Source: Saccostrea echinata (Eukaryota). Taken from it: a DNA stretch of 64,000 nt. Below are positions 35,972-38,647 of this stretch, one piece after another. The DNA is taken from NCBI RefSeq assembly GCF_033153115.1, contig NW_026889776.1, positions 12,524,001-12,588,000 on the forward strand. The letters are read 5' to 3'. The translations under genes were made by a program, and so were the position numbers. The first letter of the stretch is position 1, and each line of letters opens with the position of its first letter. The notes below the pieces were generated by a model. That model did no database searches. It was not told the origin of the DNA and saw nothing but the letters and a program-made list of their open reading frames with translations.

Positions 35972-37855
35972 CCAAAATGCTTCTGGACAAATTATATCTT
36001 GAAAATAATCTGTGTTAAAGTATTTGAAAGTAAACACATTATCAATTATACAATGTCATCAGTTCACTTAAGAACCCTCTCTACACTGCACAGTAAAGAG
36101 TTTTGATTCTATGGCATTCTTCTGCAGTTAATTGATCTGCCCTTTTATCTAAATTCCAATAAGTAGAAATTTACAGTATATTTCTTAATTTGTAACCAGT
36201 TCAAGCATTCATAACATTTTAAATAGCCAAGATAAATTAATTGAACACTTTATTCGCATGTATTTTCTCCACGGAAGTAAACAATAGTGATTTATGTTCA
36301 TTGATACTTGATTGTCTTCGAAAGAAAACATTTTGCGGTGGTGTATAGAGGGTCCTTAACGTATACGAAACAACCAGCTGATCAGCATTACATGTACATG
36401 TAGTATGCAAATAAACATCTTCCCTTCATTTTAATTACATTATTAATAATCTTAAAATGCTGCAAATAATCATAATAGATATCAAAAATATCTTATCATT
36501 TTTTTTTTTATTTACAATAAATGTAAACTCTGGGAACTGTAATCAAAATTTTAAAAAATCGTAGAATTGCAATCAATCCCAGTGAACTAACAAAGTAGTA
36601 TGCAAATCAAGATTTTCCCTGATTTTTTAATTAGATTGTATACCTGGTCTTTTCCATAATGATTTCTCAAGTTGTTTTGACAGGTGTTTTTTCTTTTATA
36701 AAAACGTTTCCTGGAACTTTCAACATGGAAATAAAATGGGAAAAATGTTTGTTGACTGAATTTATTTCAGTCCTGTTTTTTTTATTATTATTTTCTGTCG
36801 CTTGCAAGAACATTTTCATTTCTGTGGTAGATTGCTGATCAGAAATTGTCCTTTTCTTTCCAAAAATCATGTTTTCAGAAAATAATTTTGGTTCATAGTA
36901 TTGTATATAGAATATGACATACTAAAATCGATATTGTATGTTATATCAGCCTTAGAGGAGAAAGTTTTAGGTCTGCATAGTTATGTTTAAGGTAATTTTA
37001 AAACTAATAAAGTCAAGATATATTAGTTCATGAATAAAAATGAGCGAATATATCTTATAAAGGTTATCTTTTAAAAGACCCGCCGAAATATGGCAGAAAT
37101 ATTGCCGACTCGGCGTGAAACAACAACAACAATCAATCAATCTTTTAAAAGTTACTTCGTGTTTGATAGGGACTTTTGCAGGCTGGTTTGATACTTGATA
37201 TGAGTTGACATGAGGTGTTAGGATATCAATAAGACAGAGTGCGTTCAAGTCGAGAACACTTCACCGCTCAGAGACGATATATTTTTCAGTTTTCAAAATT
37301 AGGGAAAAGTAATATAAATTATTTATCAATAAGTTATTCAGTAAAATAAGGGAAGAAAATGTGTAAAGCATGATATTGACCATACAAGTTTTGAAAATAT
37401 AACTTTTCAAAAGCTGTTAGAATTGAAAAAAAAATGATTTAATCAGAACAAGGAAATGTCCTAACCTTATACGGCTCCATTCTTTAAGATTTAAGCAAGA
37501 TACCAAATGACCATGTTACTAAATCTGTATTGACTGAATGGTTTAGAACTATATAAAGCCTTACGATTTTTGCAGATCTAGTTTTACGATATTGTTATAA
37601 GTCCTCAATTGAAAGGAAATTATGTTAAAAGTCCCAAACTTGTACCGTGCATAAGGTCCTCAGTTTCTACATGTATATATACTCCTATATTGTATGCAAG
37701 TCCCCAAACTCGTACTTTGTGTATAAGGTCCACAGGTTTTATATATACCGTTATCTTGTGTGTAAATCCCCAAACTTATACCGTGTGTATAAGGTCCTCA
37801 GTTTCTTTATGTACCCTTATCTTGTCTGTAAATCATATACGGTCCAAATTTTGAT

Positions 37856-37899
37856 GCACCAGATGCGCATTGTGACACATTATGTCTCTTCAGTGATGC
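37856..37899 (-). ncRNA. Type I hammerhead ribozyme motif, copy 1 (GAAA mutated to ACAA, probably inactive)
   Basis: Minus strand reads GCAUCA-CUGAAGA-GACAuaaugUGUC-ACAA-UGCGCA-UC-UGGUGC. Confidence 0.6.
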
Positions 37900-38200
37900 T
37901 CAAGCCGAAACGTTGGAAATGCAAAATATCAAAATAAAAAAGGCTTTTGAAGAGCTAAAAAAAAGTGCCAATGATTGGGGCCAACTACGTCGAAGGATCA
38001 GAGCTATGCATGAGGGAGATTATCCTTTATTTTGAAATAAATTTCTAAATTTTACCAAAGCAGTTCAGTTACGTATATATCCGTATTTTCAAGCTAGTAC
38101 TAAGCTACTTGGGTGTAGATACCCCCGAGGACTAACAGTCCACCAGCTGAGGCCTCGACCCAGGGGACATAAAGTAAATCATATAGGGTACCAATTTGAT

Positions 38201-38244
38201 GCACCTGATGCGCATTTCGACAAATTATGTCTCTTCAGGGATGC
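38201..38244 (-). ncRNA. Type I hammerhead ribozyme motif, copy 2
   Basis: Minus strand reads GCAUCC-CUGAAGA-GACAuaauuUGUC-GAAA-UGCGCA-UC-AGGUGC; core intact, one stem I mismatch next to the core. Confidence 0.75.
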
Positions 38245-38529
38245 TCATGCCGAAACTTTGGAAATCCGAAATATTTATATGAAAAGAACAAAAAAACTTT
38301 GAAGAGCTGAAAAGGGGTGCTAAAGACTGGAGCCAAATACATCGAAAGATCAGTGCTATGCATTGGGGAGATAATCCTAAATTTTGAAATAAATTTCTAA
38401 ATTTTACCACAGCAATTAAATATATAATCCGTATTCTCAAGCTAGTACCGAAGTACATAGCTAACAGTCCACCAGCAAAGGCATTGACCCAGGAGTCATA
38501 ATGTTAATCCTATACGGTACCAGTTTAAT

Positions 38530-38573
38530 GCACCAGATGCGCATTTCGACAAATTATGTCTCTTCAGTGATGC
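38530..38573 (-). ncRNA. Type I hammerhead ribozyme, copy 3 (intact)
   Basis: Minus strand reads GCAUCA-CUGAAGA-GACAuaauuUGUC-GAAA-UGCGCA-UC^UGGUGC. Stem I is 6 bp, stem II 4 bp, and a minimal stem III has a palindromic GCGC loop. The AUC cleavage triplet predicts a cut between 38536 and 38535. Confidence 0.85.
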
Positions 38574-38647
38574 CCGATATAGTTATACAAAAAGAAAAAT
38601 GAACTTTGAAGATATACTCTTATTTTGTGTGCAAGTCCCTAATTTAT

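What the first reader, a model, noticed from the sequence alone, without database searches (positions are those of the whole stretch)
37829..38612. Tandem hammerhead-ribozyme repeat: candidate retrozyme producing ~330-345-nt self-cleaved or circular RNA
Seen: three minus-strand motifs spaced 345 and 329 bp fit the type I hammerhead consensus (stem I GCAUCA/UGGUGC, CUGAAGA, stem II GACA/UGUC, GAAA, minimal stem III U-GCGC-A, AUC site). Copy 3 is perfect, copy 2 has one stem I mismatch, and copy 1 has lost GAAA. The spacer is non-coding. Established: minimal type I hammerheads with palindromic stem III loops fold as dimers and mark Penelope-like element repeats and non-LTR retrozymes, which produce small circular RNAs in invertebrates including molluscs. 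Inference: cleavage at copies 3 and 2 would release a 329-nt monomer, mobilised by Penelope-type RT. Penelope relics occur in this window.
Basis: partly seen in the sequence, partly recalled or inferred. Interest (0 to 1): 0.8.

Follow-up and report, generated by a model that had tools for sequence, protein, structure and literature searches.

The report
Decayed oyster hammerhead retrozyme insertion
This is one worn copy of a small non-coding jumping element whose ~340-base repeats each carry a self-cutting hammerhead RNA motif; the element is of a known kind, so the copy is ordinary.

Summary
Three minus-strand type I hammerhead (HHR) motifs lie 329 and 345 nt apart at 38573-38530, 38244-38201 and 37899-37856. 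Copy 3 has a complete core. Copy 2 has a C.A mismatch at the innermost helix I pair. Copy 1 has lost G12 and A13.

Rfam scores copies 3 and 2 at 32.1 and 26.8 bits, both under the 34-bit cut-off. Chance is excluded: the exact 44-mer occurs 188 times in this 923-Mb genome and 1177 times at up to 3 mismatches, against 0 for the reversed control.

Sister copies are short dispersed arrays of 0.5-4 units. Their 5' ends vary, and 29 of 38 end at one 3' position about 36 nt past the cleavage site. This marks retrotransposition, as in Penelope-like elements (PLEs). The HHR is the best-conserved block. No covariation could be tested.

It fits the metazoan non-LTR retrozymes described in mussels. This copy is old and sits in a SINE tail.

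Not supported or untested:
- I found no Penelope relics in the window.
- No partner PLE was identified.
- No RNA run was listed, so cleavage and circles are untested.

Earlier notes of this scan report retrozyme copies of similar unit length elsewhere in this genome.

The parts
38574..38612 (-). 5'-truncated remnant of a unit (matches the last ~40 nt of sister units, with an internal deletion); this is the 5' edge of the insertion
   Evidence: window 38612-38574 aligns at 82-87% to unit ends in L003, L005 and L011. sequence.
38530..38573 (-). Hammerhead copy 3: complete core and helices; predicted cleavage between 38536 and 38535
   Evidence: 32.1 bits. It is identical to the commonest family sequence, which occurs 188 times in the genome.
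38245..38529 (-). Body of unit A (non-coding; the first ~30 nt are the conserved tail region)
38201..38244 (-). Hammerhead copy 2: core intact, C.A mismatch at the helix I pair next to the core; predicted cleavage between 38207 and 38206
   Evidence: 26.8 bits; the mismatch is marked in the alignment
37900..38200 (-). Body of unit B (non-coding; carries a 19-nt stretch absent from unit A)
37856..37899 (-). Hammerhead copy 1: dead (GAAA replaced by ACAA, so G12 and A13 are lost)
   Evidence: no Rfam match
37827..37855 (-). 3' tail ending ...GATTTACA: the family's fixed 3' terminus, about 36 nt past the cleavage site
38686..38912 (-). Context, not part of the element: head and body of a tRNA-derived SINE whose 66-nt-repeat tail received the insertion
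   Evidence: families D8, D11, D14. A second copy at 39157-39376 carries an ARAGORN tRNA-Arg-like head.
37636..37826 (-). Context: the rest of the SINE's 66-nt tandem repeats, downstream of the insertion

Best explanation
The stretch is an old, partly decayed insertion of a non-autonomous retroelement of the metazoan 'non-LTR retrozyme' kind. It has about 2.2 units of ~340 nt. Each unit carries a type I hammerhead with a 2-bp helix III capped by the palindrome GCGC. In an intact source copy a multimeric transcript would pair two hammerheads through helix III (AUGCGCAU with itself), cut after C17, and release unit-length RNA. A tRNA ligase could then close that RNA into a circle. These steps are inferred from published work on other species. 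New DNA copies are made by reverse transcription that starts at a fixed internal site about 36 nt downstream of the cleavage site. It runs back over one to four units of an uncut multimer or a circle, which gives arrays with one common 3' end and ragged 5' ends. This step is inferred from the anatomy of the copies. A Penelope-like RT is the likely enzyme but none was identified. The window copy landed in the repeat tail of a SINE. It has since lost one hammerhead and weakened another, so at most it could still release the 329-nt unit A.
For: Motifs and core. Copy number: 188 exact and 1177 near-exact hammerheads against 0 for the control; 1994 first-look candidates for the unit, spread over many contigs. 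Of 81 hammerhead sites in 34 non-redundant loci, 26 are identical to copy 3, 37 are intact by my rule and 54 have an intact core. The hammerhead is the best-conserved block: every one of the ten best 44-column windows overlaps it (0.956-0.959, against 0.866-0.931 for the other non-overlapping windows; 43 units). Pairwise identity is 0.918 in the hammerhead, 0.889 in the tail and 0.808 elsewhere (37 units). Insertion anatomy: 38 arrays of 164-1359 bp. The 3' end lies 68-82 nt after the start of the last hammerhead in 29 of 38, while the 5' partial lengths spread from 0 to 333 nt. In the 28 arrays that carry the terminal motif, after dropping duplicates, the end falls within a 6-nt span. Dimer fold. 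Non-coding, GC 0.378. Published parallels: mussel retrozymes of 350-390 bp with about 5000 HHRs, seen as circles on northern blots (PMC7229834, passages); PLE reverse transcription starts internally, downstream of the HHR, and genomic copies end there (PMC11167929, Main text read). Full-length RT plus GIY-YIG PLEs exist in this genome. Four of five sampled copies of one family carry a minimal HHR upstream of the ORF.
Against: No RNA evidence at all: no run was listed, so transcription, cleavage and circles are untested here. Rfam scores are below the gathering cut-off. No compensatory change was seen. Variation in the hammerhead is scattered, with excesses at two CpG positions (G27>A 7 times, G34>A 10 times), and loop 2 is as constant as the stems. 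The data therefore show conservation of sequence, not of structure. No clean target-site duplication was found. The circular monomer folds no better than dinucleotide shuffles (z from -1.15 to +1.33 in 10 units). No PLE shares sequence with the unit: 1 of 30 GIY-YIG loci holds a unit fragment, and it is in the opposite orientation. Neither the 5' regions of one PLE family nor the 5' and 3' regions of a second show any similarity. The samples were picked by similarity to the window's unit or to hammerhead plus tail. This favours arrays with two hammerheads and, for the 10 loci (L063-L072; 8 of the 38 arrays after dropping overlaps), arrays that have the tail.
Confidence: 0.85

Rival explanations
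1. The arrays are not an independent element but solo pseudo-LTR remnants: heavily 5'-truncated copies of an autonomous Penelope-like element whose terminal repeat carries this hammerhead.
For: PLE insertions are typically 5'-truncated partial tandems with a short tail (PMC8557442, passages). The arrays have the same layout. Li et al. report that Xenopus retrozymes resemble PLE pLTRs (bioRxiv 10.64898/2026.07.22.740005, section 14 read).
Against: None of the 38 arrays examined with 1.5-kb flanks continues into non-unit element sequence in register; the repeat is always the same ~340-nt unit. The flanks were not searched for RT frames. A search for the hammerhead's first 32 nt with a different upstream triplet found 1 place, and that is a unit with an internal deletion. 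The two PLE families sampled have other HHR-like motifs and no similarity to the unit.
Confidence: 0.07
2. It is a dispersed satellite-like repeat spread by DNA-level processes (unequal crossing-over, segmental duplication, hitch-hiking on other transposons), with the hammerhead as a passenger.
For: Some copies are plain DNA duplicates with shared flanks: window and C6 (L001/L002), L015/L019, L024/L026, L066/L067. Oyster genomes are rich in short tandem arrays carried by mobile elements (PMC8268682 and PMC7492417, search listing and abstracts).
Against: One common 3' end with ragged 5' ends in unrelated flanks on many contigs is not what unequal exchange produces. The hammerhead is the most conserved block.
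Confidence: 0.05
3. It is a Pol III-driven composite: the tRNA-like SINE head upstream, on the same strand, transcribes the hammerhead array, making a 'tRNA-headed retrozyme'.
For: The SINE head, SINE body and array lie on the same strand in the window. The same junction exists on contig C6. An earlier first-reader note (s1-814368) raised this idea for another site.
Against: The junction query matched over its whole length at only 2 places, the window and C6, among 40 scored of 3312 first-look candidates. All other matches but one cover only hammerhead plus tail; that one covers only the SINE end of the query. The array interrupts the SINE's own 66-nt repeat tail, which resumes after it.
Confidence: 0.02

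Closest known systems
Metazoan non-LTR retrozymes (Cervera & de la Pena 2020, PMC7229834), notably the Mytilus galloprovincialis family
   Same: A type I hammerhead in each unit of a short tandem repeat (mussel 350-390 bp; here 329-359 bp). Low GC, non-coding, no LTRs, hundreds to thousands of dispersed copies. It coexists with PLEs that carry minimal hammerheads.
   Different: Different species (an oyster, according to earlier scan notes) and, as far as I can tell, a different sequence family. The mussel sequences are in supplements that I could not open. No RNA data here. The fixed 3' terminus with 5' truncation is not mentioned in that paper: the word 'truncat' occurs 0 times in its main text.
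Canonical metazoan type I hammerheads of tandem repeats (newt satellite 2, Schistosoma and others, as summarised in PMC4209133)
   Same: Helix I of 6 bp, helix II of 4 bp, helix III of 1-2 bp capped by a small palindromic loop; active as dimers in tandem transcripts.
   Different: Loop contacts between helices I and II were not assessed. Activity is untested.
Penelope-like elements and their internal initiation of reverse transcription (Frangieh et al. 2024, PMC11167929)
   Same: Partial tandems, 5' truncation, a hammerhead near the repeat junction, and genomic copies that end at a fixed site downstream of the hammerhead. Flanks are AT-rich (0.73 against 0.66 for the loci).
   Different: No ORF. 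The terminus lies about 36 nt past the cleavage site, against about 85-92 nt in the Anolis element. The hammerhead is of the canonical metazoan type, not the PLE minimal type seen in this genome's own PLE.

Membership tests
Hammerhead ribozyme type I (Rfam RF00163) | Catalytic core C3 U4 G5 A6 N7 G8 A9 ... G12 A13 A14 ... A15.1-U16.1, H17 | tested here: met
   Copies 3 and 2 have every core base. Copy 1 lacks G12 and A13.
Hammerhead ribozyme type I (Rfam RF00163) | Three helices, with helix I open and helices II and III closed | tested here: met
   The cmscan alignment pairs helix I (6 bp), helix II (4 bp) and helix III. Helix III has only 2 bp in a single molecule.
Hammerhead ribozyme type I (Rfam RF00163) | Score at or above the curated gathering cut-off (34 bits) | tested here: not met
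   32.1 and 26.8 bits; 0 matches at gathering score. The shortfall fits the short helix III.
Hammerhead ribozyme type I (Rfam RF00163) | Mg2+-dependent self-cleavage after H17 | not testable with these tools
   Needs an in vitro transcription assay.
Metazoan non-LTR retrozyme | Tandem repeats of about 150-450 bp, each with a type I hammerhead | tested here: met
   Units of 329 and 345 nt in the window; 306-359 nt in the sister units whose lengths were printed. In the window 2 of 3 hammerheads keep the core.
Metazoan non-LTR retrozyme | Non-coding, low GC (<50%), no LTR | tested here: met
   GC 0.378 and no conserved open frame. Only the unit itself repeats. PBS and PPT motifs were not searched for.
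Metazoan non-LTR retrozyme | Many dispersed genomic copies | tested here: met
Metazoan non-LTR retrozyme | Expressed as unit-length linear and circular RNA | not testable with these tools
   No sequencing run was listed, so read laying could not be used.
Metazoan non-LTR retrozyme | 'Active' copy in the sense of Li et al. 2026: a type I HHR in all repeats | tested here: not met
   Copy 1 is dead and copy 2 is weakened.
Autonomous Penelope-like element | RT (plus GIY-YIG) reading frame within or next to the repeat | tested here: not met
   No PLE-like frame in the window.

The most novel reading that the evidence does not exclude
The family's common 3' terminus, spread over 6 nt about 36 nt past the hammerhead cleavage site, together with ragged 5' ends and lengths of up to four units, is the genomic footprint of Penelope-type internal initiation of reverse transcription. 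The template would be an uncut multimer or a circular RNA. If so, this retrozyme family gives a sequence-level handle on how circular or multimeric ribozyme RNAs are copied back into animal DNA: a defined initiation site that could be mutated and tested. The retrozyme papers I read do not describe such a site.
Probability: 0.4. Interest if true: 0.5.

Novelty: new member of a known kind. Interest (0 to 1): 0.3.

Why it matters
It adds an oyster family to the retrozymes, small ribozyme-bearing elements that in mussels make up a visible share of total RNA as circles. The copy in this window is a relic with no evident role. The family-level finding of a fixed 3' terminus just downstream of the hammerhead could help to test whether Penelope-like reverse transcriptases mobilise retrozymes. 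So far that has been argued from co-occurrence (PMC7229834) and from sequence similarity to PLE termini in Xenopus (bioRxiv 10.64898/2026.07.22.740005).

Tried and rejected
Rfam at gathering score on the whole window found nothing. RF00163 over the whole genome was uninformative: 73 of 83300 candidates were scored, and the control genomes gave no match either.

Covariation could not be tested. The family is too uniform, and I saw no double compensatory change in the 81 sites.

Target-site duplications: there is no clear direct repeat at the array edges. In the window both flanks fall in the same phase of the SINE's 66-nt repeat, so a duplication of about 20 bp can be neither shown nor excluded.

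A viroid-like compact fold is not supported.

Partner PLE, searched for and not found:
- 20 GIY-YIG loci with 1.5-kb flanks gave no Rfam hammerhead.
- My regular-expression scan of 30 such loci gave one hit, a decayed family copy on the opposite strand.
- The 5' regions of five full-length copies of one family show a minimal HHR in 4 of 5 but no similarity to the unit.
- In a second family (ORFs of about 780 aa) the 5' regions of two copies and the 3' region of one gave no Rfam hammerhead. The 3' region holds one HHR-like motif with an extra U, and its local alignment to the unit scores like shuffles (33, against a mean of 34.7).

The two units of the window array are 73% alike when gaps are counted. 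That is lower than each unit's likeness to units elsewhere (0.82-0.88). I read this as age plus indels, not as proof of two insertions.

Literature: three searches listed no paper on oyster retrozymes. Two oyster satellitome papers hold none of the words hammerhead, ribozyme, retrozyme or Penelope in their main text. Supplements were closed, so species lists and HHR family sequences there may include oysters.
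Full report
WHAT IS THERE. Read on the minus strand, the window holds three 44-nt motifs at 38573-38530, 38244-38201 and 37899-37856, spaced 329 and 345 nt apart (family D7). Copy 3 reads GCAUCA-CUGAAGA-GACA-UAAUU-UGUC-GAAA-UGCGCA-UC-UGGUGC. That is a type I hammerhead with helix I of 6 bp (one G.U pair), helix II of 4 bp, and a helix III of two pairs (A15.1-U16.1 and U-A) closed by GCGC. 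Cleavage is predicted after C17, between 38536 and 38535. Copy 2 keeps the core but has C.A instead of A-U at the helix I pair next to the core. Copy 1 reads ACAA for GAAA, which removes G12 and A13, so it is dead.

Permissive cmscan over 1.8 kb gives RF00163 32.1 bits (E 1.3e-5) for copy 3 and 26.8 bits (E 7.4e-4) for copy 2. Both are under the 34-bit gathering score, so the default scan of the window reports nothing. The short helix III explains the shortfall.

NOT CHANCE. The exact 44-mer of copy 3 occurs 188 times in the 923-Mb genome, and 1177 times with up to 3 mismatches. The reversed pattern occurs 0 times in both searches. The unit as a DNA query gave 1994 first-look candidates. The 40 that were scored gave 71 matches at 72-100% identity on many contigs.

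THE FAMILY. I examined 34 non-redundant loci with 1.5-kb flanks: L001-L030 and L063-L072, after dropping L007, L025, L069 and L072 as overlaps and L061 and L062 as repeats of L001 and L002.

Of 81 hammerhead sites, 26 are identical to copy 3. By my rule (core, at least 5 of 6 helix I pairs, 4 helix II pairs, helix III pair, palindrome) 37 are intact, and 54 have an intact core. Variation is scattered, with excesses at two CpG positions (G27>A 7 times, G34>A 10 times). Loop 2 is as constant as the stems, and I saw no compensatory double change. The copies therefore show a conserved sequence decaying at random, not covariation.

The hammerhead is nevertheless the best-kept block of the unit. In 43 aligned units all ten top-ranking 44-column windows overlap it (0.956-0.959). 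The other non-overlapping windows score 0.866-0.931. In 37 units pairwise identity is 0.918 for the hammerhead, 0.889 for the next 34 nt and 0.808 for the rest.

The unit is non-coding: the longest stop-free stretch on the sense strand ranges from 36 to 112 aa in 43 units, and no frame is conserved. The window array has GC 0.378. As a circle the monomer folds no better than dinucleotide shuffles, with z between -1.15 and +1.33 in 10 units.

HOW COPIES ARE BUILT. The 38 arrays are short, 164-1359 bp or about 0.5-4 units. In 29 of 38 the array ends 68-82 nt after the start of the last hammerhead. Three more (57, 60 and 64 nt) have internal deletions near the last hammerhead, and two of these (57 and 60 nt) end on the same motif. 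The partial unit at the 5' side ranges from 0 to 333 nt.

In the 28 arrays that carry the terminal motif, after also dropping the duplicates L002, L019, L026 and L067, the end falls within 0-5 nt after ...GATTTAC. That is about 36 nt past the cleavage site. The following 30 nt of flank are 73% A+T, against 66% for the loci. I found no clean target-site duplication.

One fixed 3' end with ragged 5' ends, in unrelated flanks, is the mark of target-primed reverse transcription. Arrays contain uncut hammerheads and exceed one unit, so the template must have been an uncut multimer or a re-ligated circle. This matches what Frangieh et al. showed for an Anolis Penelope-like element: reverse transcription starts inside the RNA, downstream of the hammerhead, and genomic copies end at that site (PMC11167929, Main text read). 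It also matches the general PLE habit of 5'-truncated partial tandems with a short tail (PMC8557442, passages).

Sampling caveat: the loci were chosen by likeness to a unit bounded by two hammerheads. Those were chosen by likeness to hammerhead plus tail. The census is therefore not unbiased.

THE WINDOW COPY. The array runs from about 38612 to 37827. It starts with a ~40-nt remnant of a unit end. It interrupts the 66-nt-repeat tail of a tRNA-derived SINE on the same strand. The SINE's head and body lie at 38912-38686, the first piece of its repeat at 38642-38607, and the repeats resume at 37837-37636. A second SINE copy at 39376-39157, with its own repeats, shows the uninterrupted layout.

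The SINE-to-array junction matched over the whole query at only one other place, on contig C6 at 80% identity. This is among 40 scored of 3312 candidates; all other matches but one cover hammerhead plus tail only, and that one covers only the SINE end of the query. The two loci also share unit order. This is a DNA duplication of one old insertion, not a 'tRNA-headed' family. The two units of the window array are 73% alike with gaps counted, which points to an old insertion.

HOW IT WOULD WORK. Cervera & de la Pena (PMC4209133, passages) describe the canonical metazoan type I hammerhead: helix I of 6 bp, helix II of 4 bp, and helix III of 1-2 bp with a palindromic loop. It is inactive alone and active when two copies in a tandem transcript form a shared helix III. 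RNAcofold of two copies of copy 3 gives that structure, with an 8-bp AUGCGCAU duplex, at -27.3 kcal/mol against -7.8 for one motif.

In mussel, coral and axolotl such repeats are transcribed, cut to unit length and found as circles. RtcB ligase closes them efficiently in vitro (PMC7229834, passages). Nothing about RNA could be tested: no sequencing run was listed for the stretch.

THE PARTNER. The genome holds many GIY-YIG matches (1175 candidates, 150 scored). Open frames reach 951 aa. Three sampled frames carry RT followed by a C-terminal GIY-YIG domain. Twenty such loci show no Rfam hammerhead within 1.5 kb of the endonuclease domain.

In four of five full-length copies of one young family, the region about 400 nt upstream of the ORF carries a minimal PLE-type hammerhead: helix I of 5 bp, helix II of 6 bp with a bulged A, and AAUU in place of helix III. 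It shows no likeness to the retrozyme unit.

A second family has an HHR-like motif with a GCGC loop about 135 nt after its stop codon, but with an extra U before GAAA. It gives no Rfam match, and its alignment to the unit scores like shuffles.

Coexistence of retrozymes carrying canonical hammerheads with PLEs carrying minimal ones is what the mussel paper reports. It does not name the enzyme.

WHAT IS KNOWN AND WHAT IS NEW. The kind is known (PMC7229834; Li et al., bioRxiv 10.64898/2026.07.22.740005, abstract, section 14 and passages). Three literature searches listed no paper on oyster retrozymes. Two oyster satellitome papers do not use the words hammerhead, ribozyme, retrozyme or Penelope. 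Supplements were closed and may say more.

That the host is an oyster comes from earlier notes of this scan, not from any test of mine. Those notes also record retrozyme copies with hammerheads 346-347 nt apart elsewhere in this genome, and two follow-ups called the copies ordinary. I did not compare their sequences with this one. I agree for this copy.

The one point I did not find in the retrozyme papers is the fixed 3' terminus with 5' truncation. 'Truncat' occurs 0 times in the 2020 main text, and the single occurrence in the 2026 preprint refers to PLEs. This terminus ties retrozyme insertion to the PLE way of starting reverse transcription.

VERDICT. It is unproven for RNA circles and wrong about Penelope relics in the window. 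This is a new member of a known kind, and the copy is a relic. Interest 0.3.

Noticed in passing
window 38686-39803 (minus strand): Two copies of a tRNA-Arg-like SINE (heads at about 38830-38912 and 39282-39373). Each is followed by tandem 66-72-nt repeats, as if the SINE's tail were a minisatellite. Head fragments recur in several other loci.
   Followed up: partly
L073, L075, L076, L077 (5' regions of full-length PLE copies): A young, nearly identical PLE family carries a minimal hammerhead about 400 nt upstream of its ORF start: CUGAGGA, a 6-bp helix II with a bulged A, GAAA, AAUU in place of helix III, and a 5-bp helix I. Rfam does not report it at E up to 5.
   Followed up: partly
L081, about 195 nt from its high-coordinate end (3' UTR of a ~780-aa PLE): An HHR-like motif with CUGAAGA, a 4-bp helix II, a GCGC loop as in the retrozyme and a 5-bp helix I, but with an extra U before GAAA. 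There is no Rfam match. The element ends in a (TA)n run.
   Followed up: partly
G000, table (for example C30:16246120/16249633 and C16:2203814/2206256): Many GIY-YIG matches come as head-to-head inverted pairs 2-4 kb apart, the inverted double insertion known for PLEs.
   Followed up: no
L021 631-1471: Two retrozyme arrays in one locus look like a single array split at unit position ~72 by an ~840-bp insert. The two array flanks that border this insert, about 22 nt each, are reverse complements of each other.
   Followed up: no
L010 flanks: A 9-nt direct repeat (AATTTTAAA) abuts the 5' edge and recurs 28 nt after the 3' end. It could be a target duplication separated by a PLE-style tail, or it could be chance in AT-rich DNA.
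   Followed up: no
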